54,468 nt of DNA from the NCBI RefSeq assembly GCF_000315625.1, contig NW_005434599.1, forward strand, positions 1-54,468, given 5' to 3'. The stretch is from Guillardia theta CCMP2712. Taxonomy: Eukaryota; Protista; Cryptophyta. The notes below the pieces were generated by a model. It was not told the DNA's origin. It saw nothing but the letters and a program-made list of their open reading frames with translations, and made no database searches. Of the stretch, positions 1 to 39,857 are shown in pieces (position 1 is the first letter of the stretch; the number at the start of each line of letters is the position of its first letter). A program made the position numbers and the translations under genes.

Positions 1-9
1 GCGTTAATA

Positions 10-2924
10 TTACCAAATATGTGGTAATATTAGCTTGAATTGCTTGTTGATACGCAGATTTCTGAAAATAGAGATATAATCTTGCAATGAGACATCATTG
101 TAATCGATCATATGATTGAATCGTGAATATTTCAAGAAATCATTATATTCAATTTGTGATTTGAATAAAGGATAATTGTGTTGATAGTCTATGTTTTTTT
201 TATAATATATTTCATTGATCTGATAACCGCAATCATCCTGTTTGACATAGCGACATCTCATCAAACACTGAAATATCTTGTTTGTCTCAATAAATGCATT
301 CTCTACATTCCCAAATTCTTCCAATAAGAACACTCTTTTATCAAAATACCCTTCTGATTCTTCACTCAATCCTGTTGTGATTGTGAAAGTATAAGCAAAA
401 AATTGGAAACCCTCTTTCGATATCAATGAAGGGTTCTCAATATATTTTTTGTATTTATCTTTGTTGTCACCAGTTATAAACAAAAACTTTATGTTGCAGT
501 ATTTAAATATTTTCTCTAATACATCATACCACTTCTCAAATACAATGATGCCACATATATTCATTCCATTCTTAATATCCTTGATCACATTATTGATAAA
601 GAGTGCAAAGATATTGTATTTCGCATCCACGTTTTTTGAATATTTCGTAATATTTGCTTTTAGTATCAATTTCTGTTTTAATCTTATTTCATCCGTATGA
701 AATACAGATACAACATTTTCATTGACACCCCATCTTGTAAATATGTCCTTCACAAAACATATCGATTGTGGAGACATTCTCAATAATCCCTCTGCAAAAT
801 ATACCTTTTTTAGATTTGTGGAAGTCAATAGACGATGTAAATTCCTAAATATTTCCTTTCTTTTATCATCATTCCTATTTCCATCCGTTGTTTTACATAT
901 TAATTGTGATGTTATCTCATCCAACTCGTCAAACACTATCATATCATAGCCATTCACATGATGGTTCTTAGACAATGAATGAATCGTTGTTATCAATCTA
1001 TCAGATCCATGCACATATTTATTCTTCTTATTGTTGTATATGTCAAATAAATCATATCCTCTCTTTTTCATCTCTTCATTTAATCGTTTCTGTAATGATG
1101 TTGATAAAGTTATGTTCGGGGTTATAAATAAAACATTATCTTCTCTTTTTATTTCATCAATCAGCAAACCAGTTTTATTCTTCCCCATGTTCGCTGATAA
1201 TATGTTATATTTTGTATCTGATTTCAATTTTTCACCAAATTCAGGATATGGTAAAATCTTGAAAATATTTTCATCCAAATCTAGATTAGTTGATGTACAT
1301 ATTGATCTAAACACTAGGTTTTCTTTCCATTTGCTCAATACTTTTTTATCAAACAATCTTGCAACATATGAAATGTATTTTATTGGATTCAATAGGGAAA
1401 TCTTATAGTCATAGATTGTCTTGTTGTTCTCTATTGTCTTACAAAAATTTTCTATTATCAACCTATGCTTTTCTTTCTCATCTATCGAATCTAATGGCAT
1501 CTTATCCTTTAATTCCTCAATCAGCTGTTTCACTGATTTTCTATGAGTGTTCTTGATTCCACATTCCGTCGCAAGTTTTAATAATTGTTTTCTTGTTTGA
1601 TTCATATATGCATTCTCATTGTTTACATACGCACCATGTGTCCAATCTATTAGTTTGGTTTTGAATATTTCAATCCTATCACCATAATCAATTCTTGTAA
1701 ACCCTTGGTATTCTTCAAATTTATCTTCGCTCACATGTATCACATAATTCAACATGCACGAGATTATCTTCTTCCATTCATTGTAATCAAATACTTCCAA
1801 TGTATTGAATATTGTATCTAAACAACACAACATAAAGTGTTGTTTGATATAATCCTTTTCTATAGCTTCAAGATACTCTCTCCCTCTTTCTTTTATTGTT
1901 TTGGTTATTCTTGATTCTAGATTTTCACTCCTGTCTATTGCTATTCTTTTTTTATCTTTCCTCGCAAATTCGTTGCTTGGCAAAGCAATCGCTTCACATT
2001 TTGAATCACACTCTTCAAACTCTAATATTTTCCATGTTTCAATCAATTGATCTTCATATATACCTACATAGTGATATGTTTTCGGTACATTCAATGGCTG
2101 AATCGCCTTCTTCACATTCTTTGATGATATATATCTCTCTGATATTCTCTTTAATTTTGATTGACCAACCAATCTAAATTGTTGGTTGTCTGAATATATG
2201 CTCAGATCACATACACCACATTGTTTCATTTCATTGTTATTCGTTTTCTTCTTGTAGTGATTTTTCATGTTAAACTCTTCTAATGTTGGCAACAATATTC
2301 CTAGTATTTCATTCCTAAATTTCCAATCAAATATTATTGGCACTAATACATGGTACGAAATCTTAAAAGATAACATATCATGTTCTTCGCCACTTGATGT
2401 ACATATTGAAAAATCTTCCTTTTCAAATCTTCATCCAACTCCCTTTTTATTACTCTTATCAACTCCTCTATCAGTTCATATATCTCTTCTATAAACGGAT
2501 TCTCCCCTCTATTTATTTCTTCTTTGTATTGTCTTATTTCATCTAGATTATCCACTGGTTTATCTATGTCTATCGGAAACTTACATAATTTCCCTTCTTT
2601 TAATATTTCATATCCATTTATGTTGTAACTCAATGCTCTCTCCGTTTCTTTATATTTCAAATCTAAAAATGAAAATTCTTTCACTATTCTATCCCCACAT
2701 ATTTTATCACTCCCTATTATCATTATTGATCTCTTGTTCAATTCACTCTCTTTTAAACTTTCGTATAGTGAATTCTCATTTCTCACTAGATAGCTATACC
2801 ATCTCTCAAACAATGTGCCATCTTTTTTCTTTTCTATGTTCTCTTTTGTAACACGCTCTAATGATTTAAACTTCTCTGTATCTCTCAAATCTAATATTTC
2901 TGTTGTCTTGCTAAAATACTTCAT
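10..2924 (-). pseudogene. AEP (PrimPol-like) primase fused to UL9/origin-binding-protein-type SF2 helicase, split by a 1-nt frameshift near 2420-2423
   Basis: ORF 2343-2924 has AEP motif I (YEILKEGKLCKFPIDID). The other frame continues KEDFSICTSSGEEHDMLSFKISYHVLV (motif II, SxH) and CDLSIYSDNQQFRLVGQSK (motif III). Helicase motifs SANMGKNKT, VFDELDEITSQL, AYTFTITTGLS and QCLMRCR resemble UL9-type helicases. Confidence 0.8.
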
Positions 2925-3012
2925 CCTTCATCATTATAATCCATAATTTGTTTATATACTTTTATCATTATCCAACACCCAATTATTTTCTAAGTAAATG
3001 CTGATAAAATAA

Positions 3013-3303
3013 TTAAATTCTTAAAGCGTTCCGTTCCTCTTTCTTTCGTTTGTAATATTCTCGCATTCTCGCTTTCATTCTTTCTCTATATTCCTCATCT
3101 TCCTTGTATCTCCTATTGTTATTACGCTCCACTGTCTCTTTAAATTTCTCTCTAAATTCTTCATCCCTCTTATATCTCTCCATATTCCTATCATTCTTCT
3201 TCTTATAGAACTCTTTTAAAGTTCCTTCTTCTCTCTTCCTTTCCATTGACTCTCTATATTTCTCCCTATTGTATGCTCGCCTCTCTTCTATTGAATTAAA
3301 CAT
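3013..3303 (-). CDS. small highly charged helical hypothetical protein (virus-like)
   Basis: 96-aa ATG-initiated ORF, R/K/E/Y-rich, co-oriented with neighbouring element genes. Confidence 0.55.
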   Translation of the reverse strand: MFNSIEERRAYNREKYRESMERKREEGTLKEFYKKKNDRNMERYKRDEEFREKFKETVERNNNRRYKEDEEYRERMKARMREYYKRKKEERNALRI

Positions 3304-3356
3304 TCTTCTCTTATTATATTATTGTTTTTATTCTTATATATTTCATGCATTAGTCA

Positions 3357-3598
3357 CCATTGATTCCACAAAGGTATTGCATTGATTCTGCATTGATTCT
3401 GCAAAGGTATTGCATTGATTCAGCAAAGGTTTTGCATTGATTTTGCATTGATTTTGCATTGATTTTGCATTGATTTTGCATTGATATTGCAAAGGTTTTG
3501 CATTGATTCTGCAAAGGTTTCGCATTGATTCAGCAAAGGTTTCGCATTGATTCTGCATTGATTCCGCAAAGGTATTGCATTGATATTGCTAAGGTATG
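3357..3598. repeat. 22 tandem 11-bp units of two types (GCATTGATWYN and GCAAAGGTWTY)
   Basis: Parsed directly; array abuts the stop codon of the RING ORF at 3599. Confidence 0.92.
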
Positions 3599-4198
3599 CT
3601 ATTCATCAACTTGTGGAGCAATTTGTTTTTTCAATTCTTCTATCTCTGATTTCAATTCACTCATTTCAAATTTTAGTTTCATATTTTCTTGATTGCAAGA
3701 TTCTTTGTCATATTTGATCAATCCATTGTTATAACAAGCTAATAGATCATAGTACAAATCTTCTACACTCTTTCTCTTGTTTTGTTCATATCTCAAATTA
3801 TTTTTTAGTTTCATTATCTCTTCTTCCTCTGTTTTTTTCTTCGCTGATTCCGTTTCTTGTAGTCTTAATATTTCTCTTAATCTTTTTATTTCATTCTCAT
3901 GTTCACATAATTTCGCATAGTCTCTATAAGTTAAACGTATTACATCCTCTTTTGAAAACTCTGATTCAAACATTTTTATATCGTTCTCTTTTCTACATAA
4001 AGGACAATCATACGTTATTGTTGGATAATGCAATTCTTCATACTTATAGATTTTTACCTTCTCTAAATATCCTGTCATATGATGCACTTTTCGCGATTGT
4101 AGATTATTGATACAATCTGTGCATATTACATATCTTTTACACTGCACACATTTTATTGTCACTTCTCTGTAATTACAAACACAACAAATCCTGCTCAT
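3599..4198 (-). CDS. RING-finger-like (putative E3 ligase) protein with C-terminal coiled coil
   Basis: CCVC..CVQC..ICTDC..(insert)..CPLCR pattern followed by a heptad-rich charged region. Confidence 0.7.
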   Translation of the reverse strand: MSRICCVCNYREVTIKCVQCKRYVICTDCINNLQSRKVHHMTGYLEKVKIYKYEELHYPTITYDCPLCRKENDIKMFESEFSKEDVIRLTYRDYAKLCEHENEIKRLREILRLQETESAKKKTEEEEIMKLKNNLRYEQNKRKSVEDLYYDLLACYNNGLIKYDKESCNQENMKLKFEMSELKSEIEELKKQIAPQVDE

Positions 4199-4240
4199 TC
4201 TCTTTTTTATTATTTCGCTAACTATTTAAACCTTTTTTTT

Positions 4241-5398
4241 GTTGTCGCCCAAGATTAATATGATAACACAACAAGTAAAAGCTTGGGGTTTTATGTGGCT
4301 ACGAGTAGCTTCATGTTGCTTCTATTTGCTCCTTTTGACAATTGGGGCTTAACTGGACAAAATTGCAACGGGATCACAAGATCTAGATTATGAGGGAATA
4401 AGCTTGCGATCCCGTTGCAATTTTGTCGACCCATGAAATTATGATAGTTATCAGGAAATAGCACGATAACACAGTTAAAATCTGATACAAATATAATTTA
4501 TACTTTAATACAAGGTATCAGATTCGCAGCAGATGTATTTTAAACCTTTTTTATGTTGTCGCCCAAGATTAATATGATAAATATGTAAAAGTTTGGGGTT
4601 TTATGTGGCTACGAGTAGCTTCATGTTGCTTCTATTTGCTCCTTTTAACAATAGGGGCTAAACTGGACAAAATTGCAACGGGATCACAAGATCTAGATTA
4701 TGAGGGAATAAGCTTGCGATCCCGTTGCAATTCTGTCGACCCACGAAATTACGATAGTTATCAGATAATAACACGAGAACACAGTTAAAATATAAAAAAT
4801 ATAATTTATACTTTAATACAAGGTATCAGATTCGCAGCAGATGTATTTTAAACCTTTTTTATGTTGTCGCCCAAGATTAATATGATAAATATGTAAAAGT
4901 TTGGGGTTTTATGTGGCTACAAGTAGCTCCATGTTGCTTCTTTTAGCTCCTTTTGACAATAGGGGCTAAACTGGACAGAATTGCAACGGGATCACAAGAT
5001 CTAGATTATGAGGGAATAAGCTTGCGATCCCGTTGCAATTTTGTCGACCCACGAAATTACGATAGTTATCAGATAATAGCACGATAACACAGTTAAAATT
5101 TACATATATATAATCACATCCATATAGTATCTCTATGATCATAGAGCTAAACCATTAAATTGTTGTCGCCCAATGATATGTAAAAAATATATGTAAAAGC
5201 TTGGGGTTTTATGTGGATACGAGTAGCTTCATGTTGCTTCTATTTGCTCCTTTTGACAATAGGGGCTAAACTGGACAAAATTGCAACGGGATCGAAAGAT
5301 CTAGATTATGAGGGAATAAGCTTGAGATCCCGTTGCAATTCTGTCGACCCATGAAAATGTGATTGTAATCTGTAAATGTTACGAGAACACAGTTAAAA
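4241..5398. repeat. four direct repeats (~240-bp core, ~300-314-bp period), each containing a 72-nt palindrome
   Basis: Cores start GTTGTCGCCC at 4241, 4555, 4863 and 5162 and end CAGTTAAAA; hairpins at 4356-4427, 4666-4737, 4974-5045 and 5274-5345. Confidence 0.93.
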
Positions 5399-5475
5399 TC
5401 TGATAGAAATATTATTTTTATAGCTTTTACGAAGGGTTTATGCCTGTGTTTTAAGGTATGAATTCAACCAAATGG

Positions 5476-6569
5476 TATCAGCAGATTGATTTCATGGAGG
5501 TCTTTTAAAAATCGCATTGCACTGCGGTGGTTTTAATCGGATTCTTGCAATACACTCGCCGTCGGGGAATGTAGAATGAACAAATAAATCTATTACACTA
5601 CTAAAATTTCAGATTTAACTTAAAAGAAAAATTATCACAAAATCATCAAGAAATATATATGGTCAGTATGTTTCAACAGGGATAGGCCTTCGGCCCACGC
5701 ACTTACGTGCGTTACCGCTGTTTATTCTGTTATTTATGTGTTATGATACGCTCCATTATACAGTTCAGGACGACTGAAGACGTGTAATCAAGGGTTTGCG
5801 AGTGTAATAGGAATAACAAGTGTAGCACAAGTTGCAATGGAATAGATTCGCACTGCGTGCTCATCATAGCATTCGCTTTGCTCATGCTATACCGCCGTTT
5901 TAACATTGTGTAATTTATGCACTGCAATGCAGCATAAATCAAGATTGATATGGCAATTGCAAAATATATCTTGTTTATTATTCTGATTGAAATTTTGTCA
6001 TTGGATGATAATAATTTTGCTATGTTTTTAATTTGAATATTGTTGGTACTATAGTGTAATAGGAATAACAAGTGTAGCACAAGTTGCAATGGAATAGATT
6101 CGCACTGCGCGCTCATCATAGCATTCGCGTTGCTCATGCTATACCGCCGATTTACATTGTGTAATTTATGCACCACACTGCAGCATTAATTTACATTGAT
6201 AGGGCAATTAATATTTATTGGATATTATTTTAATTGAAATAATATTTATTGCAATGGGTAATTAATATTTATTGAACATAATCTTAATAGAAATTTTGTC
6301 AGTGTGTTATAATATTTTTCAATGTTTAAATTTGGATATTATTAGCATTGTACTGCAATTGGAATATATTTTAATTTTAGTAGTGTAATAGATTTATTGT
6401 ACGTAGGAATCATTGTTTTTACGAACAGAGTCATAATATAGGCTGTCCGGATAATGGTCTTCAGTGTGGTCTACATTCCCCGACGGCGAGTGTATTGCAA
6501 GAATCCGATTAAAACCACCGCAGTGCAATGCGATTTTTAAAAGACCTCCATGAAATCAATCTGCTGATA
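5476..6569. mobile_element. non-autonomous TIR DNA transposon (MITE) with 100-bp perfect TIRs and 8-bp TSD CCAAATGG
   Basis: 5476-5575 is the exact reverse complement of 6470-6569; CCAAATGG lies at 5468-5475 and 6570-6577; no transposase ORF. Confidence 0.85.
5801..6190. repeat. internal direct repeat within the MITE (~135-bp well-conserved block, 252-bp offset)
   Basis: AGTGTAATAGGAATAACAAGTGTAGCAC... starts at 5801 and at 6053. Confidence 0.85.
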
Positions 6570-6744
6570 CCAAATGGACGATGCGCCTCCACTGAAGTAC
6601 CCCCTACCCTACCCTCTCATTTGGTACCTTTGAGATGGGTAGGGTAGTGAAGAGTTTGTTATCGTTCGGGGGGTAGTGGGGTTGTGAAGTAAAGTGACCA
6701 GTGCAAAACATGAAGGCAACGCAAGGAAATTGAGGGCGAAAGAC

Positions 6745-6915
6745 ATGATTGAGATGATTGAGATGATGATTGAGATGATTGAGATGATTGAGATGATTGA
6801 GATGATTGAGATGATTGAGATGATGATTGAGATGATGATTGAGATGATGATTGAGATGATGATTGAGATGATGATTGAGATGATGATGATGATTGAGATG
6901 ATGATGATGATGATG
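6745..6915. repeat. (GATTGAGAT/GAT)n microsatellite running into an assembly gap
   Basis: Direct inspection. Confidence 0.9.
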
Positions 6916-7045
6916 NNNNNNNNNNNNNNNNNNNNNNNNNNNNNNNNNNNNNNNNNNNNNNNNNNNNNNNNNNNNNNNNNNNNNNNNNNNNNNNNNNNNN
7001 NNNNNNNNNNNNNNNAGCAGTAGAAGTTTAAGGCTAACGGGCGGA

Positions 7046-27020: not shown

Positions 27021-30000
27021 ATGAGTGGAAGGGAAATCGCTTCCAAGAAAGCAAGACTGATCCTTGCTGTCTCTCTCGGCATCACACTTGTTGCTCTCAC
27101 AATGGTCATTCAACAAGGATCGCAACCTGCTGATGTAATTTCGTTAATCTTGAGGTTGGAACCAGTGCTGACTGCATGGGTCATGGCAGGGATCAGAGAG
27201 CACTGATCTGTTTGAGATGGCAAAGAGAGTTTTGAACCTTCAGGTATGAATCAACTCTTAACTGTTTTGATATCAAGGACTATCGAGCCGTGACAGTGGT
27301 CTGATGAGAACTGAAATGGTAGCAGTTGGCCTCGACCTTGTACGGTGGCAAGAAGTACTTTCTTGTGCCAGCGGGAGAATTCTTTCAAGTACGCAGGGAA
27401 TGCTTGTTGAAAGGGGGAGAGCTAGTGACTCTTGAAGACGAGGTGCGACTTTCACCTTGAGAGTTGCAACTAGTCCAAGTCACTTCCATTCCCTTTCAGA
27501 CGCAGGCAGAGAATGTTGCTAAGCTATGCACCAAACCTCCTTGTATCTCATTTCGTTTGTATTTTTTGTTACAACAAGCTCATGTAATACAGGTTACATT
27601 GGGCTTGTTCGCACTGGACCGTTCGATTCATTTTTCTGGCTCGATGGCTCAAACTCTTCATACAGAAGTTGGTCTCAAGGTCAACCAGAACAATCAAATC
27701 AGGTTCCAGAAAATGACGATCACCCTGACCAATCTAATCGACATGCACAGTTCGTTGCCTTCGGGAATGCTGAAGGAAGAGAGTGGCAATCAGTAGGCCT
27801 TGTCAACTCGAAATTTCCAGGACTGTGCGAACGGATTTCAGAGCGAAAAACTGTTGATTCATGCAGCAAAGTGCAAAGTTGTGAGCTTTGCATGCAGTCG
27901 AAGGTAACAACAGGATAAGTTCACATGTGCGCCTCATCTTTGAACAGGAATCGGACTCAAAGGAGGGCTTTTGTGTGCCAATTCTGTATAACACGAATGG
28001 AACGACATGCGAAACCCGCAGAAACCTGCACGGCTCTCATGCCCGAGTCGACACGAAGTGTCGTCTGTCACGGTTTGAAAATTCACAAGCAGAGGCAAGT
28101 TTGGTCACGAGGTAACAAGCGCGCCTCGTTAAGGAATGCTATGACTGTTTTTCTTGTTTCAGGTATGCTCAAGCTCCCACCTCCTATGGTTTTCAACAGT
28201 GCATCTCTTCTGATTTTACGTTTGAAGCATCGGGGAAGTTCAACGTCATCGTGACCCCTTGCTTCACTGAGACTTCGATTCGAGACAATGATGTCTACAG
28301 TCGAAAGCAGCCCACTACCGCCTGGGTGCAGGACCTCAGCGATGAGAACTTCACGACGTGCATTCAGAAAACCAATTCAAGAGGCCTCAAAAACAGAAAT
28401 AGTTATTTTGATCGGAGACTGCAGGCGTCATACCTTGCATTCACAGACTCGCCTTTCCAAGGATCACGAGCCGGAAACATTCGGTATGCTCTACCCGTCA
28501 AGAAAATTCTGCTGACTTCAATGCAGATTCGAGGCTGCTAAAGGCAACAGTCAGTGTAAGAAAGTCGAGTTCAGTCCCTCGTTTCCTCAAAGACCAAGAG
28601 TCATCGACAGTGCCCAATATGTCGCTAACCCGAAAACCCCTAACTTGATTACCTCATGGTGGCAAGAGCTGACCCCTTCCGGGGGAACGCTGTGCATAGG
28701 TTTGGAAAAGAAGCAAAACCTCAAGACAGATGTTATTGTATCATACATCGCATGGGTTGAAGTTCCCAAGAATGTAATGGATGGTAATTTGATTGCAATT
28801 TCAATTACCATGCCCTAATTATTGTCGGTTCTCAGGAACAACAACTATTGAAGGATGGAAATGGCGGAGTGAAAGCCAACGATCACGATGTGCCGTTGTA
28901 CCTTTCGAATCTTACTGGATCTACCCACCCATTATTCAAGCCTCCGTTAGAGAAAACAAACCTGCTTCGTCTGATCAAAGCTCCCCGCTGACCACTTGGA
29001 TCGAAGGTGTTGACAACGACAAATTTAAAGTGTGTGTGCAAGAGTTTGCAGACAGATCGTCGAATCGAGGGCAGCATGAGTCAGTCGACGTGGATTGGAT
29101 TGCCTTGAATGAGAACCTGTGTCCTTTAGGACAGTATCTCGTTTCTGGGACCATCGCGCACTTCTATCTGCTACCCGGAAGCACCGAGGGACTTAGTGGC
29201 AGTTGGCCCGAAGATCCTTACCTGTCTTTCCCAATCGACAAGACGTATATCAAAAACAATCTTCTGCAATCTTTGCTAGACATCGACACGACACAGCAAA
29301 AGGTTGGAGTCAAGATTCGTGCAGTAATCAATGTTAGGATGGAGGGATCATACTATTTTCGTATGTTCACAAGACAATATGCAAACCTTAGACTTGATGG
29401 AACTACGTTGTTTGAACTGTCTCCGTCAAAAAGAATCAAGTCCTTCAACATCTTCCTTGCAAGTGGAATGCATACCATTGAGATCAAGTGGGTAACTGGT
29501 TTTCGCAAGGACAACCTGTTGCAGTTGTCCTGGAGAGGAAGAGATACTGGAAACGGAATGCACTATCTGGTTGGCAGCCATTGTTCTCTCGCACCAAAAG
29601 AGCCCAAAAAGGCGGCACTTGAGCATGGTTTTACTCTTTCTTTCATCGAGACGTCTGATTCTTCCGTCGGAGTGCGGACCCTTCGCAAACTAGATGCTTT
29701 CTCGCGTATGACAGTTCCTCAGATCCAGTTTGAAACCCCCGAAGAATTGAAAGCACTGCAGAGTGCAGCCAAATCAAACTACTCAGGGAGGTGCGAAGGC
29801 ATCATTTACGTGGTACATGAAGGTGAATATGTCTTCCAAGTCAATTACGACTTGAATTCAAACCTTTGGATTGATGGCACGCCGCTGACAAAAGATTCCA
29901 GTTCGATGTACCTTGCTAGGGGGTATCATCACCTTGAAAATTTTGCCTTCAATGTGAAGCAATCCAAAGGTTGGACGCTGAAGTGGCAAGGCCCAGATAC

Positions 30001-33000
30001 CCAAGGAGTCCTGAAAATTCTTGAGGGTTTCCACATCGCAAGAGTTCAGCAAGGTATCACGGCACGGTTCTATCATTTGAACGAGACCCATGATAGAATT
30101 CCTAAAAACATTCTCTACAACTTGGTGCCATTCTCCAATGCAGCCATCATGAAAAAGATTGATTTGAAAAACCTCTATCAATTTCAGTCACTAGATCCTT
30201 CAATTCCAGTCGGGTACACGGCAATCATCATCAAAGGAAGTTTTTACATTCATCTAGGCGGATACTACACTTTCTATTTGACGTCGGTCGATGGTTCGAA
30301 ATTCTGGGTAGACGGCAAGAATGTTATCAACCTTGAAGGAAAACACGGTAGCAAGACTTCACACGGAAGGATCTTGCTTGAATCTGGAATACACACATTT
30401 CGTATGAGTTATTGGATTGTGAAAAACAGAGCGTTTCTGCATCTTCGTTATCGCGGTCCAGACACAAACAATTATTTTAGAGATCTTCCGACAGTCGACT
30501 TTGCCGGCCGCGATATTCAATCAAATACTAATCATGGCTTTGTTGTTTCTTCGTTTTACTATGACAAGAATCTCAGCTCGACTCCCGACATTAAAGGCAA
30601 ACTACGCAATCATGTCGCAAATAGCCGCTACATTGATTTCAGTGATGACATGGATTTCAAGGACCTCGATCCAGAATGGCCGACAGCTTCTGGAGTCTAT
30701 TTCCATGCAACTGGAGTTTTGCATCTGAAGTTGACCGGAAATTATTCGTTTGTGGCTACTGGATTGAGTTCGGTAATGGTAGACGGGGAAGAGACCCAAG
30801 GTACTGCAGCGAATGAAATGACATTGAACAAGGGGTATCACATTGTCCGAGTCTCTGGATTCACAAATGGTATCAAACCTCTTTGAAATTGTGAAGAATT
30901 CTGACTCTTGTTCTCAGGCTATGACAAATCCTTCTCCCTGCAGTATTCTGGTCCAGACACGCTTGGCAAATTGAAGCTCCTCCGAGCTTCTGACTTTATA
31001 CGTCCTCCCATCGCCAATACGATCGTGTACAGTGGTAATCGGTGGTGCTCCAATTGGTTTCTGACGACTTCTACCTACGGAGGATGGTTCTATCGTAGCT
31101 CCAGGAGCAAGTCTATCCTTGTAACTGCCGAATCAAGCAGTTTAGACTCGGAGATTGTGAATCAGCTGGAAGGGGCAATGGTCCCTCACCGAAGAATACT
31201 TCTAGCAAGCTACTTCAGCGGTGTCTTGCCCATTGAGCAACCTGGTAGATATGAGTTCTGCATGGACTCTCACGGCTCGATTCGTCTGGATGGCCGTCGC
31301 ATCTTGTATTACCCGGGATCATTCAAGCCAAACCTCAAGTGTAGGACTGTCATGTGCCAGCAGCGGGATTACAATGTCTCGGTGACGGTTATCAGCCGCT
31401 ACGGGCAGAAGATGTCGTTCAAAGCGACGTACAGGGGGCCCGACACCAACGGCATGGCGATTGTCATACCTTCATCTGGTTTCGATAAGTCTACGTGTCA
31501 TGCACAGACCCCTCCGGAGTGCAATTGTGAGAGTGCGTGGTGTATCAAGTGGTATCTCAACTTTTCGTTCATGCCTGAATTGATCTCGAAGCCTGTCCTC
31601 GCGCAAAGGTCAAGAAGGATGGATTTCTATTTGGGCAACACCATTCAAAGCAGGCTGCATTTTGAACACCTGAAAAACATTTTTGTGGTAGCCAGCGGGA
31701 TCAAATACATCATGAAAGGTGGAACCCACAGTTTCTGTATTGAATCAGCATCCAAAGCGACGTTTGTGTTTGGAGATGCACAGATTCTGCAGATGATTTA
31801 TCCTGGAGGCATCAAGAAGTGTCAGAGTGTTGATCTAGTCCCAGGAGCATACAACATGTCGATTGTGATCACAGAGCTCTACACTACATCCAGGATGATG
31901 GTCAGACACAAGGGTCCTGACGACAGGCGATACAATTACTTGTTGTCGAATTGGCAAGGAATGGCACATTGCGGGCAAGATCCCCACATGGTCAAATTTC
32001 CTCATGTTGAACCTCCTCCACCGCCAAAGCCTGAGCCCAAGGAACCTGAGCCCAAGGAACCTGAGCCCAAGGAACCTGAGCCCAAGGAACCTGAGCCCAA
32101 GGAACCTGAGCCCAAGGAACCTGAGCCCAAGGAACCTGAGCCCAAGGAACCTGAGCCCAAGGAACCTGAGCCCAAGGAACCTGAGCCCAAGGAACCTGAG
32201 CCCAAGGAACCTGAGCCCAAGGAACCTGAGCCCAAGGAACCTGAGCCCAAGGTTGTACCTCTGCAAGTCATCGATGCTTGTATTCCGTACATCCAGACCA
32301 ATTCAAGTGACTCTTACCGTACATGTGTCAAGGCTAGTTGTAAACTTGCAGAAAAGCATTCTCTTTGCCATTTCGTTAACAGCGAAGAAATTTGCTATAA
32401 TGTGGATGGTCAGAAATACTGCAAGCATGATGGAAAGGACGATGATCGGTGTATACAGATCAATTCCAAACAACAACAGAAGTTCTGTGAGCAACTGCTT
32501 CAGCCTCTGTACCTCACGTACTACTGTGAGAGATATCAGAGAAGCAAGAGTGATCGGGATCTAAGATTTTGCAAAATGGAGAACTGTCGTCTTTCCCTCA
32601 AAAACGGGGGTTGTCCATTTCTGAACAAGAAAGGATTTTGCTATGAAAGCAATTCTCAGCAATACTGTTCAAAAGGAGGCGATGAGCGATGCAAACCGTT
32701 TCACAGCAACAGCTTCAACAGCAAGAATCAGTGCGATAAATTTGCGAACCCAACCTACAAGAACCTGGCTTCACCTAATGCCAACGGGTTCGGAAAAGGT
32801 TTCTTCATGGAACATGCAAAAGTGCTTGAGAGTCCATTCAAGCGTGAGATAAAAACCAACGAGCTGCGGCCTGTCCATGCACCACTCTACGACATCAGGT
32901 TTGACAATGATAACGACTGGAAGCGCCTCCTTGGAGATGACGTCGATACTCGCAACCTCCTCGTCGTCTTCCAAGGCATGATCCCTGTCTCTGTCTCCGG

Positions 33001-35022
33001 GGACTACTCCTTCTTCCTCCGCTCCAAGGGCAGCGTTCGCTTGCTCATCGACGGGCTCATTGTGATCGATGACCCTTCACATCACGACGTAGGCACGCGG
33101 ATCGGGTCCGCGAGGCTGAAGACGGGGTATCACTACATGCAGATCGTCATGTACAGTCACCATCAGGATCCAGTGCTGACTGCAAGGTGGGCGGGTCCTT
33201 CAACAGACGAAAAGCAGAAGCCGTTGAGCGGCCTGCACCTCAACGCGTCATCGGCCAAAGACAATCAGGCGGAGCAATCTTCTAGTGCAGCTGAACTTCC
33301 TCAGCCTGGCACCTTGGGGTTGGAGAAAGGTTTCAAGTTCTTCATCTATAACAACTACAAATCAGATTCAAAATCATTCGACACATTCATGATGTCAAAT
33401 CCTGAATTTGACGGAACCTTGACAGATTTACAGCTCAACAACGATAACGACTGGAAGCGCCTCCTTGGAGATGACGTCGATACTCGCAACCTCCTCGTCG
33501 TCTTCCAAGGCATGATCCCTGTCTCTGTCTCCGGGGACTACTCCTTCTTCCTCCGCTCCAAGGGCAGCGTTCGCTTGCTCATCGACGGGCTCATTGTGAT
33601 CGATGACCCTTCACATCACGACGTAGGCACGCAGATCGGGTCCGCGAGGCTGAAGACGGGGTATCACTACATGCAGATCGTCATGTACAGTCACCATCAG
33701 GATCCAGTGCTTGACGCGACATGGAAGATCGAGAGTGACGGCAAAGCTTCCAACATCCTTGCTTTCCATCAATCCGGTTCTATCTATGGTGTACAACCCT
33801 TTGTGCCACAATGGAACGTGTCCGAAATCATTCAGCCCGTTGAAAACAATACTGTCCGAGTTATCGTTGAGGAGCCAGCCCGCGATGAAGTCGGCTTCCC
33901 TGTCGTTGATGGGTTTCAGTGCTCCAACTTTGAGACGGCCAAGACCTCCCACAAGCTAAAGCATCGGGTGTCGGATACTCCTCTTTCAACCGTCCTGCTG
34001 CCCGTCATCAACTACACAAGCCGTGAAACTTACTCAGACTCTCTTCCTAACAACTTGACTGCCCTCACTGTCGAGTGCATGGGCTGGTTTCAGGTGAAGA
34101 AAGCTGGAGCATACACCTTCATGATCAAGACTGTAGGGCAAATGCAGCTGCATGTCGATGGAGTCTCTAAACTTCAGGTCAAGGGCCAGGACCAGCAAGT
34201 CTTTGCTCGCACGGAGGTCAGCCTAGCGTCAGGATATCACTTCCTGTCGGTGGTGTGGAGGAACTTGGCTGAGAACTGGCAGCTGGAGGTCTTGTACAAT
34301 GGGCCAGACACCTCGGATCAAGTCAAATATCTACACGGCTCTACTCTCAACGACACGATGTCAGAGGCGGCGATAGAAGCTTTCAGTAGGGAGAGCCTGG
34401 GGCTGGTCAATAAGGACGAGGTGAAGAAGGAAGTCAGGTACATCTACAAGATCATCTCCGATCGAGATGTCTACAGGGAAAAACCCAAGCGGGACAAAGA
34501 GGAAGTGAAAACTCCGGCGCCAGCTCCTGCTTCCACTCCTTCTCCGGCGCCAGCTTCAGTCCCAACTCCGGCGCCAGCTCCAGCTCCAGCTCCAGCTCCC
34601 GTCCCGGCTCCAGCAATATCCAAGCAGAACACGATGTCGCCAAGCAGGAAAGACGTCTACATAAACAACGACCCATTCGGCTTCTTGAAGAAGAAGCTGG
34701 AGAAGAAGCAGAAGATTCAAGAAGCTCAGGAGCAGTTTCACAAGTCGATCCAAGGAATGAAAGACAAAGGCTACCTGAACGCCATCAACAATGCTAAGAA
34801 TGCTAAGAATGCCCAAGGCCACCAAAGGAATCGAGATGGGTCTTGGTTTGGAAAGCTGAAACCCCTCAAGTACCAGGAGAACTATTGGACTGATGGAAGA
34901 GGGTGAGTGGTTGCTTTGCTGCTTGACAGAACTGATTCTTGTTCTTCAGGAAGTGGGAGGGTGACAAGCACACGGGATATGAACCTGTCGAGTATGGACA
35001 AGGATGGAGAGACACAGATTGA
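27021..35022 (+). CDS. large secreted/surface protein with C-type-lectin-like, H-lectin-like and multiple PA14/GLEYA-like domains, EPKEP repeat, Cys-rich segment and PA-rich linker
   Basis: N-terminal hydrophobic segment; GYIGL..FFWLDGS..YRSW..GQPE (CTLD-like); repeated GxYxFxLxSxDGSxxxxDG..GxH..GPDT modules; ORFs 28793-30886 and 30908-34906; last exon ends 35022. Confidence 0.75.
32030..32251 (+). repeat. perfect 15-bp coding tandem repeat (CCTGAGCCCAAGGAA; PEPKE) x ~15
   Basis: Direct inspection, in frame in ORF 30908-34906. Confidence 0.92.
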
Positions 35023-36006: not shown

Positions 36007-39000
36007 ATGCGCACTACCTACCGGAGGAAGTGCAAAGATTGCGATGTGAGCGACCACAAAATGGGATGTGGGATAGTGGGATAGTAGTGATGGTAGTGAT
36101 GGGATGGGAGGGTAGTGATAGTAGTGATGGGATGGGATAGTAGTGATGGTAGTGATGGGATGGGATAGTAGTGATAGTAGTGATGGGATGGGATAGTAGT
36201 GATAGTAGTAATGGGATGGGATAGTAGTGATGGGATGGGATAGTAGTGATGGGATGGGAGGGTAGTGATGGTAGTGATGGGATGGGATGGTAGTGATGGG
36301 ATGGGATGGTAGTGATGGTAGTGATGGTAGTGATGGGATGGGATTGTAGTGATGGTAGTGATGGGATGGGATGGGATGGGGTCTGAGAAATGGTACCAAT
36401 GGGTGGGTGGGATCTCTCACTGCCTTTGACTTGATATGCTTTAGATCGAGATTGTTCCTGGAAAATACAAAGGCACCACCTGTGTAATCAGACTGCCGCT
36501 TATTGTTCTTCCATCTAATATTTGCTTTTCAAATGTCGATGGTACAATGTTGTTGTCGTTAAGTCGGTGAGTATAAGTAGGAATTCAGAAACAGAAAAGG
36601 ATCTGACATGGTCCTTGCTTTCTCAATCGGTTGCTTTGATGGGCTCGCAACGGGACTTCGGATAGCATGTAAGGCAGCATTATATAAGATGGGAGAGCAG
36701 AGGGAAAGTGCGATCTGAAATATTTTATCTCTGGGTTTTGTGTGGCGGACTTGGGGCTTGCATGGGACTCCCGACGGGGCTTTCTAGTATGTAAGTATAG
36801 TGTAGGATGGGAGCGGATGGGATGGGATCATTCGATGGGATGGGATGGGATGGGCGAATCATTCGACGGGATGGAATCCTTCAATGGGATGGGATGGGGT
36901 GGCGAGACTACGAAGGGTAATGATGACTCTGACATGTCTTGCTTCTGGGCTTGGGCCGGGCTTGGCGGACGGGACTCGCGACGAGGTTACATAGGGTGTA
37001 AGTACGATATGGGATGGGATGATGGGATGAGAGAGGGGTATGAGTCTGACCTTTCTTGTTTCGGACCTTTTGTTACGGGTTTGGTGTCCGGGCGGCGTGA
37101 CTCGTGCTGGGATCGGATAGTATGTAAGTATGGGATGGGGTGGGGTGGCGAGAGAGGTATGACTCTGACATGTCTTGCTTCTGGATTGTGTACTCCGGAA
37201 TCGGGGCTTGCCGGACGGGACTCGCGACGGGGTATGGCAGTGTGTAAGTATGGGATGAGACGGGGGATGGAGACTGCAGATCGAGCTGATGAATCGTATC
37301 TTATTGTCCAGACCTTTGATATGGACGACGATTACACCTGCATGTACTGTGATGGAGGCGAAGGCGAACATGTTGATGATGAGCTGATTTGCCCGGTAAA
37401 GGAATTTCTCATAGAGAACTTGACTTGAAGCATCATTGATGATTGTTTTCGTATTGTGTCATACGCTGGGATGGCTCGCCATTGGACTGGATAGGATGTA
37501 AGTGCAATATGGGATGGGGTTGGAGTGAGAGTTTGATGTGAATCTGACCATTTTATCTCTGGATTTTGTGTGGTGGACTTGGGGCGGCATGGGACTCGCG
37601 ACGGGGCTTTCTAGTATGTAAGTATAGTGCAGGATGGGGGCGGATGGGATGGGATGGGATGGCGAGAGAAGGGTATGAATCTGACATGTCTTGCTTCGGG
37701 ATTGTATATTCTGGACTTGCGACTTGGCGGACGTGCGGGGCATAACAGGGTGTAAGTACGATATGGGATGGGATGGATGGGTGGTGACTGCATATTGCGC
37801 TGATGATTTACACCTTTTTGTCCAGACCTTCACCGCAAACTCAAAGGACGATGTCACCTGCACATATTGTGGAACAAGGGAGGAAGAACATGTATCTATT
37901 GATGAAGAGAAGATTTGCCCGGTGAAGGAATTTTCTCACGAGTAGAGGAAACGACTTGGAGCATAATTGATATTTGTTTTCGTATTTTGCATCACTCGCT
38001 GGGATGGGCTTGCGACCGGGGCTTGCGCTTGCTAGTATGTAAGTACGATATGGGATGGGATTGGGTACCTGAGATAAAGTCATGTCTGACATATCTGGTT
38101 GTTTACATGGGGCTTGGGACGGAACTTGCCGACGGGCTTGATAGTATGTAAGTTTGATATGGGTGGTGGTGAGAGAGAGAGATGAATTTGATCTATTCTG
38201 TTTCTGGATTTTGTGTTACGCACTTGGGGCTTGGCGGACGGGACGCGCGTCGGGGCATGACAGGATGTAAGTATGGGATGGGGTGGCAGTGTTAAGGGGA
38301 CATGCATCTGACTCTCTTGTTTCTGGATTTTGTGTCGCGGGCTTGGATGGGGTAACTCATGCCGCTGGATAGTATGTGAGTATGGGATGGAGTTGGGGTG
38401 AGAGACCCTCATCTGATATCATCTTGCTTGCACATGTCGTTACATCTCAAACTCTCCATCTGCTGGTATCCGACAAAGTGTTGTGTGAGTTTGTCACATG
38501 CTCAGCTTCATGAGTTGCTGACCTGTTGTTTTGACTGTCACTGCCGAAAATTGCTGCTGTAGAATGTAAGTGGAGAATTTTGCTATCAGTCAACATCCTG
38601 TGGAGTCAATGACTCGGACATTTTTCAGTGTAGCAAGGCCAGAGGATGGGCCGAATATTACTACGACGAGGTAAGTTTTGGTCGGGTGCTCTTGTGCAGA
38701 CTTTTTGAAGTCAAATTCATTTTGAATGACTCGAGTAATATGCAGCATGTTTGCGACTGCTGCACACGACGCCTCGAGCACAGAGAAGAAGAACAAGAAG
38801 TGATAATACTAGAAGAAGAATCTCACGTGGTAAGAAATGAGCAAAAGTCAAAGAAGAGGAAAGCAAAGGGGCAAACACTAAGAAACTGATGAACAGGATG
38901 TCAAAGAGAAGAAAGAGTCAAATGCTCAGAACGAGCGAAAGCGCAAGAGGGAGGAATGCATCATCATTGTGGATAGTGAGGATGAGGAGCAAGAGCGAAC

Positions 39001-39338
39001 AGCCTCACAGCAGCAAGGCGTTCAAGTTGCCTCCAACATTATCAACGTCGAGGTGTGAATGATTTCTTCCCTCAAGTCTCTTACTCGTGTCTTGTTGGCA
39101 CCAGCTGGGCGACGTGCAGTCGGTTGACTCCAGTCTGGAAGTCATTGACCCTGACCAAGTACTTCTCACTGAGGTATCCGGCGGTCACGGCCAAAAGTCT
39201 GCGGCTGAGTGCCGCAGTGCCGGGCTGCCTCCTGATTCGCCGGCTGAGCCTGAACCGCTGACCGGGGGCTCCGACGCCGCGTCAGGACGCCGGCCCGGCC
39301 AGTCGGACGGGCCGGGGGCCGGGCCCGGGGCATGTTAG
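36007..39338 (+). CDS. micro-exon gene encoding a multi-zinc-finger protein with SIM-like motifs and NLS
   Basis: Exons 36007-36045, 36445-36483; 3-nt exons 36564-66, 36666-68, 36788-90, 36995-97, 37121-23, 37241-43; 37312-37395; 3-nt 37495-97, 37615-17, 37749-51; 37826-37921; 3-nt 38036-38, 38145-47, 38264-66, 38373-75; 6-nt 38479-84; 3-nt 38563-65; 38629-38670, 38746-38829, 38897-39052, 39105-39338 (last exon end uncertain). All introns are GT-AG and phase 0. Confidence 0.75.
36061..36381. repeat. (GGGAT/AGTGAT)n compound microsatellite in intron 1 of the micro-exon gene
   Basis: Direct inspection; lies between donor 36046 and acceptor 36444. Confidence 0.85.
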
Positions 39339-39857
39339 GCGCGCCTATCATGGCAGGGCTGCACCTAGCTAGTAACTTAGTAATGCCGGACGACCAATCA
39401 TGAAACTGGACCCGCACATTGATCAGCAAAGGCTTGAAGAAAGGGCAGTTACATCGCGGACTGCTAGGAAAGCTTCTAATTCACTCTTTCTGCCTCAGGC
39501 ACAATAATAAATAATAAGAGACCAGAAAGACACCAAACCCCACTCAACCTCACCGACCGGACATAACTAATACCTTCACTCAACCCCTGATAAACCCGAT
39601 GCCTTGTGATATTGATAGGATTATCAATAAGGCAGAAGTGTTTCACTAGTAGATCTGATAGCTCGCTTTTGCTGTCCTTGTTTGTTTCAATATCCCGTTG
39701 GTGCGGTTTAGGCTGTAGGGCCCAGAGAAAGCATGGGGGCCCGGGAGCAGTGAAGTAGAGGACAGAGGACAGGACAGGACAGGACAGGACAGGACAGGAC
39801 AGGACAGGACAGGACAGGACAGGACAGGACAGGACAGGACAGGAGGAAGTCTCCGCC

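What the first reader, a model, noticed from the sequence alone, without database searches (positions are those of the whole stretch)
36007..39338. A gene spelled out one codon at a time: fourteen 3-nt micro-exons plus one 6-nt exon, all phase 0
Seen: in this apparent satellite, fourteen GTAAGT/GTGAGT/GTAAGG donors are preceded by exactly AG plus 3 nt. They are aag|TCG|gtgagt (36564), tag|CAT|gtaagg (36666), tag|TAT (36788), tag|GGT (36995), tag|TAT (37121), cag|TGT (37241), tag|GAT (37495), tag|TAT (37615), cag|GGT (37749), tag|TAT (38036), tag|TAT (38145), cag|GAT (38264), tag|TAT (38373) and tag|AAT (38563); one more is aag|TGTTGT| (38479). Joined with the normal exons, the frame stays open: MRTTYRRKCKDCD-IEIVPGKYKGTTC-S-H-Y-G-Y-C-TFDMDDDYTCMYCDGGEGEHVDDELICP-D-Y-G-TFTANSKDDVTCTYCGTREEEHVSIDEEKICP-Y-Y-D-Y-CC-N-CSKARGWAEYYYDE-HVCDCC... 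Internal support: the micro-exons recreate parallel motifs (TC-SHYG..TF / ICP-DYG-TF / ICP-YYDY), and CC+N+C forms a CxxC knuckle pairing with the downstream CDCC. No micro-exon is a stop codon. Known: isolated 1-3-nt exons exist, and Schistosoma MEG genes have runs of small symmetric exons. I know of no description of runs of up to six consecutive single-codon exons. Inference: since every exon is symmetric, skipping would delete single residues in frame, allowing combinatorial residue-level diversification. Gene predictors and short-read aligners would probably miss this.
Basis: partly seen in the sequence, partly recalled or inferred. Interest (0 to 1): 0.95.

Follow-up and report, generated by a model that had tools for sequence, protein, structure and literature searches.

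The report
Algal gene with single-codon exons
In the alga Guillardia theta this gene really writes 16 amino acids through 15 exons only one or two codons long, all spliced in order; the layout probably lets a family of immune-like proteins gain, lose or swap single amino acids in a variable loop, much as was reported once in a truffle.

Summary
Real and expressed. All 14 three-nt exons and the 6-nt exon are present (14 versus 0.25 by chance). RNA contigs from three studies carry the predicted inserts (all three runs in one study, runs 2-3 in three), and a 273-aa database protein equals the 23-exon model. The reference annotation (Guillardia theta GUITHDRAFT_143420) misses them. No skipping was seen, only retention of non-adjacent introns, so combinatorial splicing is unsupported. 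The gene belongs to a family of 20 or more loci: an 8-Cys scaffold around a variable Tyr/Gly/Trp-rich loop built from ~110-nt intron+codon repeats, often fused to kinase, PARP, RING or caspase domains. A second allele shows 17 non-synonymous to 0 synonymous changes and a swapped codon unit. Best reading: DNA-level, in-frame, residue-by-residue diversification of a recognition loop. Not categorically new: codon-sized microexons are reported in Tuber NACHT-ANK receptors (Iotti 2012). This scan had already found the family at other G. theta loci. New here: the precedent, the allele data, and similar arrays (DNA only) beside mycorrhizal-fungus kinases and fungal GTPases in metagenomes.

The parts
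36007..36045 (+). Exon 1, start codon, first CxxC of the family scaffold
   Evidence: joint 36045 to 36445 seen as loose ends in X1
36077..36380 (+). GATGG/GTAGT simple repeat inside intron 1, not part of the micro-exon units
36445..36483 (+). Exon 2, 39 nt, ends in the conserved Cys that opens the loop; same size in nearly all paralogs
36564..37243 (+). Run 1: six 3-nt exons starting at 36564 (S), 36666 (H), 36788 (Y), 36995 (G), 37121 (Y), 37241 (C)
   Evidence: 18-nt insert in X1 contig, depth 57; P0010
37312..37395 (+). 84-nt exon inside the loop, C-x2-C-x6-H-x6-C motif; only relative in the genome is the 96-nt exon
37495..37751 (+). Run 2: three 3-nt exons starting at 37495 (D), 37615 (Y), 37749 (G)
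   Evidence: 9-nt insert in X1, X2 and X4
37826..37921 (+). 96-nt exon, C-x2-C-x6-H-x8-C; duplicate of the 84-nt exon together with flanking introns (76-82% identical)
   Evidence: weak zinc-ribbon Pfam hits below cut-off
38036..38565 (+). Run 3: 3-nt exons at 38036 (Y), 38145 (Y), 38264 (D), 38373 (Y), the 6-nt exon 38479-38484 (CC) and 38563 (N); CC and N are the conserved family scaffold
   Evidence: 21-nt insert in three studies; CC+N module at 20 loci, 0 in control
38629..38670 (+). Scaffold exon C-x-K-x2-GW...YDE
38746..38829 (+). Scaffold exon with the last CxxC, then a Glu-rich stretch
38897..39052 (+). Charged low-complexity exon; intron 38830-38896 lies before it
39105..39338 (+). 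Last exon to the stop; no Pfam domain; transcript contig runs on to about 39528
36484..38562 (+). Introns upstream of micro-exons (78-204 nt): branch-site-like CTGAC 42-73 nt before the acceptor in most, then a long AG-free zone; strong GT(A/G)AG donors follow; related to each other as ~110-nt repeats

Best explanation
A protein-coding gene of a G. theta family whose N-terminal 8-Cys (probably two-zinc) scaffold displays a hypervariable loop written one codon per exon. SHOWN: the micro-exons are included together and in order in every fully spliced form seen; each has a distant branch-site motif and AG-free zone, then a strong donor; partly spliced RNAs keep only non-adjacent introns; the introns are homologous repeats; loop length and sequence differ between paralogs and between alleles. 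INFERRED: neighbouring introns are removed one after another because spliceosomes cannot sit on both sides of a 3-nt exon at once; wrapping each codon in a ~110-nt repeat makes it a recombination unit, so unequal crossing-over or conversion adds, deletes or replaces single residues in frame; selection for new binding surfaces (non-self or virus recognition) drives this. This copy has no effector domain and carries two extra zinc-knuckle-like exons in its loop, so it would be a stand-alone sensor, adaptor or decoy. Splicing part about 0.97; DNA-level diversification about 0.75; immune recognition about 0.5.
For: Inserts match in RNA of three studies; P0010 identical to the model, P0001 identical to its residues 36-273. 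Tandem pattern 197 vs 4 control; with a branch motif, 3-nt exons 299 vs 83 but 4-nt 56 vs 84 and 2-nt 47 vs 94. 217 three-nt exons, no stop, 9-15 expected. Branch motif median 60 nt vs 10-30 nt at ordinary acceptors. Units with 90-95% identical flanks share the amino acid in only 18% of pairs; units at least 97% alike occur in different genes. Allele L052: 17 non-synonymous, 0 synonymous (p=0.017), motif Cys/His ligands and all splice sites kept, hybrid unit before the 84-nt exon. Loop Tyr 5.4x, Trp 5.2x, Gly 2.4x over local background. Paralogs end in kinase+PARP, kinase+RING, caspase or 2H phosphoesterase. Precedent in fungal NLRs.
Against: No ligand, phenotype or zinc binding is shown. Non-synonymous divergence (6.6%) is not above intron divergence (5.8%), so relaxed constraint with a chance lack of synonymous changes remains possible. 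Pair counts and stop counts are not independent. L052 starts only 20 nt upstream of the hybrid unit, so indel and codon swap cannot be told apart. This gene's own repeats are old (55-82% identical). Much of the RNA over run 1 seems to retain an intron (rough, contig depths).
Confidence: 0.6

Rival explanations
1. Combinatorial exon skipping (first reader; Tuber nank and Schistosoma MEG model): isoforms lacking single residues are made from one gene, perhaps only under infection or stress.
For: All exons are symmetric phase 0; reported for codon-sized exons in Tuber.
Against: No skipping joint in three contig sets; every insert is complete; P0001, P0009 and P0010 all include the micro-exons they span. 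Donors are uniformly strong.
Confidence: 0.17
2. Neutral or selfish proliferation: an intron+3-nt unit spreads by slippage or unequal exchange and is tolerated because it keeps the frame in an unconstrained loop.
For: Introns are homologous repeats; exon divergence equals intron divergence in L052; several family loci look broken (L043 second array, L049).
Against: Arrays are concentrated in one domain family, not scattered; codons change faster than their flanks; strong Tyr/Trp/Gly bias; look-alike arrays elsewhere again sit beside kinase, SPRY-TPR and GTPase genes.
Confidence: 0.15
3. Expression throttle: many hard-to-splice introns slow maturation, and retained-intron RNAs carrying stops or frameshifts are degraded, keeping a potentially toxic gene family low until splicing conditions change.
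For: Retention of 36998-37120 and 37244-37311 looks abundant in X1 and X2; all six retained introns checked carry a stop or shift the frame; paralogs carry caspase, PARP and kinase domains.
Against: Does not explain codon variability or composition; this gene has no effector domain; retention may be ordinary nuclear intermediates.
Confidence: 0.08

Closest known systems
Tuber melanosporum nank (NACHT-ANK) NLR family, Iotti et al. 2012, PMID 22289772 (read only through PMC4986451, PMC10197012, PMC3689799, PMC13449251)
   Same: Tens of codon-sized (3-bp) exons in an expanded, immune-type gene family, interpreted as a diversification device.
   Different: Ascomycete fungus vs cryptophyte alga; NACHT-ANK vs 8-Cys scaffold with no NACHT or ankyrin; extensive alternative splicing reported there, only full inclusion or retention seen here; here the variation found is between genes and alleles.
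Schistosoma micro-exon genes (MEGs), review PMC4015677
   Same: Runs of small symmetric exons that keep the frame.
   Different: MEGs mostly have signal peptides, micro-exons up to 75% of the coding sequence and skipping isoforms; here no evident signal peptide, 48 of 822 nt (6%), no skipping.
Ectocarpus ROCO-LRR and NB-ARC-TPR exon shuffling, PMC3341825
   Same: Candidate algal immune receptors whose binding region is modular at exon level, reshuffled in DNA and under diversifying selection.
   Different: Module is a whole LRR or TPR repeat there, a single codon here; unrelated domains.
Isolated 1-15-nt plant and mushroom microexons (PMC8831610, PMC12230235)
   Same: Real, missed by annotation, strong GTRAGT donors.
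   Different: Single or paired conserved exons in ordinary genes, not repeat-built arrays (Coprinopsis: 27 three-nt exons in 26 genes).

Membership tests
Codon-sized microexon array (Tuber nank type architecture) | Multiple 3-nt exons in one gene, really spliced | tested here: met
Codon-sized microexon array (Tuber nank type architecture) | Expanded, variable, immune-type gene family | tested here: met
   20 or more loci; paralogs with kinase, PARP, RING, caspase; immune role itself untested
Codon-sized microexon array (Tuber nank type architecture) | Extensive alternative splicing of the microexons | tested here: inconclusive
   none seen in contigs of three studies, but contigs drop rare forms and only 18 raw reads mapped
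nank NACHT-ANK NLR gene family | NACHT and ankyrin domains | tested here: not met
   273-aa product too short; no such Pfam hit in the exons or paralog exons scanned
Schistosoma MEG | Symmetric micro-exons | tested here: met
Schistosoma MEG | Micro-exons form most of the coding sequence | tested here: not met
   48 of 822 nt
Schistosoma MEG | Signal peptide, secreted product | tested here: not met
   N-terminus is basic and Cys-rich with no hydrophobic stretch (by inspection, no predictor run)
G. theta 8-Cys micro-exon loop family | CxxC exon, 39-nt exon ending in Cys, 3-nt exon loop, CC, N, C-x-K-x2-GW exon, CxxC exon | tested here: met
Zinc-binding domain | Metal binding by the Cys/His set | not testable with these tools
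   motif conservation only; exon-level zinc-ribbon hits below cut-off

The most novel reading that the evidence does not exclude
Single-codon exon arrays are a recurrent, independently evolved diversifier of eukaryotic immune or signalling proteins (cryptophyte 8-Cys family, Glomeromycotina-type kinases and SPRY-TPR genes, fungal GTPases, Tuber NLRs), working mainly by in-frame recombination of intron+codon units and hidden from annotation in many genomes.
Probability: 0.4. Interest if true: 0.88.

Novelty: new variant of a known kind. Interest (0 to 1): 0.72.

Why it matters
It is an RNA-confirmed extreme for the spliceosome: six consecutive 3-nt exons, far below the size that exon definition should allow, with a readable code (distant branch site, AG-free zone, strong donor) and visible intermediates that make splicing order testable. 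It shows a way to make a protein loop evolvable one residue at a time without frameshifts. A whole candidate defence family is mis-annotated in a reference algal genome, and the metagenome hits suggest the same blind spot in mycorrhizal and other fungi. The design was known only as a lineage-specific oddity of truffle NLRs.

Tried and rejected
Satellite-only reading: rejected by RNA. Skip-all transcripts (36483 joined directly to 37312 etc.): not found. Genome-wide 2-nt or 4-nt exon class: no enrichment. Fixed codon-specific cassettes: only partly; the nearest unit in another gene shares the codon in 20-24% of cases vs 5% baseline. Homologs of the internal exons outside G. theta: the exon-level search gave only G. 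theta records, the L052 allele and unrelated repeats. Viral contigs: no array. Raw-read run X10: 18 reads, uninformative. Papers on Guillardia or cryptophyte micro-exons: none. Iotti 2012 and DeMarco 2010 are not held, so both are cited second-hand. RNA-derived support for the fungal arrays: not found among kinase hits. About half of the metagenome hits are plain satellites and were set aside.

Full report
OBSERVATION. Shuffles give 0.25 on average and at most 3. With one extra intron (38830-38896) the gene has 23 exons, all multiples of three and phase 0, giving 273 aa. The genome has 87.1 Mb in 669 contigs; the protein cluster names it as Guillardia theta CCMP2712, gene GUITHDRAFT_143420.

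EXPRESSION. Contigs of three probable RNA runs from different studies were laid on the locus (the tool marks RNA as a guess, but the spliced joints settle it). Between 36483 and 37312 X1 has the 18 letters for S-H-Y-G-Y-C. Between 37395 and 37826 X1, X2 and X4 have the letters for D-Y-G. Between 37921 and 38629 all three have the 21 letters for Y-Y-D-Y-C-C-N. No joint omits a micro-exon. An exon-level search returned a transcript-derived protein equal to residues 36-273 of the model (P0001); its cluster holds P0010, identical to all 273 residues, and the reference annotation P0008, which lacks all 15 micro-exons. The alternative forms are retentions: 36998-37120; 37244-37311; 37618-37748; 37922-38035 with 38148-38263 while the intron between them is removed; and 38376-38478 (P0009). 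No listed piece keeps two adjacent introns. By contig depth, a poor measure, fully spliced run 1 (57) is a minority beside retained forms (47 and 101). Each retained intron has a stop or shifts the frame. Contigs drop rare variants and the raw-read run gave 18 reads, so low-level skipping is not excluded.

SPLICING CODE. Upstream of micro-exons the branch-like motif lies at a median 60 nt from the acceptor (89% at 40 nt or more, n=155) against 10-30 nt at ordinary family acceptors (n=12), with an AG-free zone of median 71 nt (array spans were first defined with this feature, so the figure is partly circular). Inference: the distant branch site leaves room for U2 and for U1 on the donor three bases past the acceptor, the first AG downstream is used, and neighbouring introns go out in sequence. 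From memory, not checked: distant branch points are known for the potato invertase mini-exon.

FAMILY. A tandem micro-exon pattern occurs 197 times in the genome against 4 for the control. Only length 3 is enriched: 299 vs 83, against 56 vs 84 for 4 nt and 47 vs 94 for 2 nt. The CC+N module occurs at 20 loci, control 0. Fetched loci share a scaffold: a 39-nt exon ending in Cys, a loop of about 3 to 20 single-codon exons, CC, N, a C-x-K-x2-GW exon and a CxxC exon; a first CxxC exon was located in five loci only. Of 217 three-nt exons none is a stop; 9-15 are expected from base composition (units are related, so this overstates significance). The loop is rich in Tyr (5.4x), Trp (5.2x) and Gly (2.4x) against a local background, a make-up typical of binding loops (my knowledge). 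Downstream exons of paralogs encode kinase+PARP, kinase+RING, caspase or 2H phosphoesterase. This gene has none of them. It uniquely holds two exons with C-x2-C-x6-H-x6/8-C inside the loop, produced by a segmental duplication that also copied micro-exon units (introns 76-82% identical).

DIVERSIFICATION. Across the family, pairs of units whose 95 flanking intron bases are 90-95% identical differ at 55% of codon bases and share the residue in 18% of cases; near-identical units recur within and between genes. This fits codon replacement under selection, or homogenisation of introns around retained codons; either needs recombination between units. L052 (run SRR23967302, about 94% identical) is an allele or close ortholog. 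It keeps every splice site and every Cys/His of the motifs, has 17 non-synonymous and no synonymous changes (p=0.017; 16:0 without the swapped unit), and changes micro-exon 37495 from Asp to Gly. The unit before the 84-nt exon is a hybrid of the 36995 acceptor and codon with the 37241 downstream intron: either a clean two-codon indel or a cassette swap. Non-synonymous divergence (6.6%) is not higher than intron divergence (5.8%), so the case for positive selection is suggestive only.

BEYOND THIS ALGA. A triple-unit pattern hit more than 120 metagenome stretches. About half are satellites. The others are arrays with varying codons and only length 3 enriched. One AT-rich group (341 units, 2 stops, 12 expected, about 98-nt period, Gly/Ile/Leu/Met-rich) lies 5' of kinases whose named relatives are Funneliformis and Rhizophagus, and in L129 between SPRY and TPR exons. 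A second group (181 units, 0 stops, 10.5 expected, mostly 55-65-nt period) includes arrays 3' of a GTPase that I take for mushroom-type from memory (L098, L128). L120 is a GC-rich array of unknown origin. These are DNA-only observations with no RNA test, and they are not homologous to the algal scaffold as far as seen.

COMPARISON. [quoted passage not shown] 2012, as cited in PMC4986451, PMC10197012, PMC3689799, PMC13449251; original not held). The present gene works like that design in layout but is not a nank gene, and shows inclusion rather than skipping. It fails the MEG criteria tested and resembles Ectocarpus exon-shuffled receptors in logic. No paper links micro-exons to Guillardia or cryptophytes in the library.

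LIMITS AND STEPS LEFT OUT. Following the operators' note, the spliced model was searched exon by exon only; the joined homolog search and the fold of the joined protein were left out, also by way of P0010. The joined model was built only inside scripts, to check the frame and to compare it with fetched records. P0001 and P0002, returned by the exon search, were used for exact look-ups. The AT-rich, virus-like stretch at 1-7000 was only observed.

VERDICT. New variant of a known kind, already seen by this scan at sister loci. Interest 0.72.

Noticed in passing
L053, L054, L056, L077, L087, L099, L112, L125 (soil metagenome contigs): Arrays of up to about 25 single-codon exon candidates, about 98-nt period, in an AT-rich soil group; in these loci they lie upstream of Glomeromycotina-type kinases. 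L112 has two stop triplets and looks broken. No RNA test.
   Followed up: partly
L129:1023-1871: Single-codon array between a SPRY exon and a TPR exon in the same AT-rich group.
   Followed up: partly
L098, L128, L096, L084, L065, L131: Arrays with 55-65-nt period and up to about 60 units (E/K/L/D-rich); in L098 and L128 they lie 3' of a P-loop GTPase; introns too short for the 60-nt branch distance, so a different splicing solution.
   Followed up: partly
L120:1-2728 (-): GC-rich array of about 30 units with 96-nt period and Ala/Thr-rich codons; organism unknown.
   Followed up: no
L055:600-1270 (-): Short array Y-R-Y then N, followed by a CxxC exon; possibly another lineage with a similar layout.
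   Followed up: no
L048, L040 (G000 C261, C70): Blocks of several micro-exon units duplicated almost identically within one gene; in L048 a Leu to His codon change sits between flanks that are 100% identical.
   Followed up: partly
L043 second array; L049: Family copies that look broken after the array (one runs into unrelated sequence, one has a tandemly amplified intron piece).
   Followed up: no
window 1-7000: AT-rich (30% GC) stretch with a 788-aa ORF (10-2376, -) giving weak helicase hits and a 308-nt tandem repeat; virus-like, observed only.
   Followed up: no
window 28793-34906: Large PA14-domain ORFs just upstream of the gene on the same strand.
   Followed up: no
window 39233-39600: The few X10 raw reads pile up at the 3' end with first mate on +, not matched by depth over the coding exons; unexplained.
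   Followed up: no
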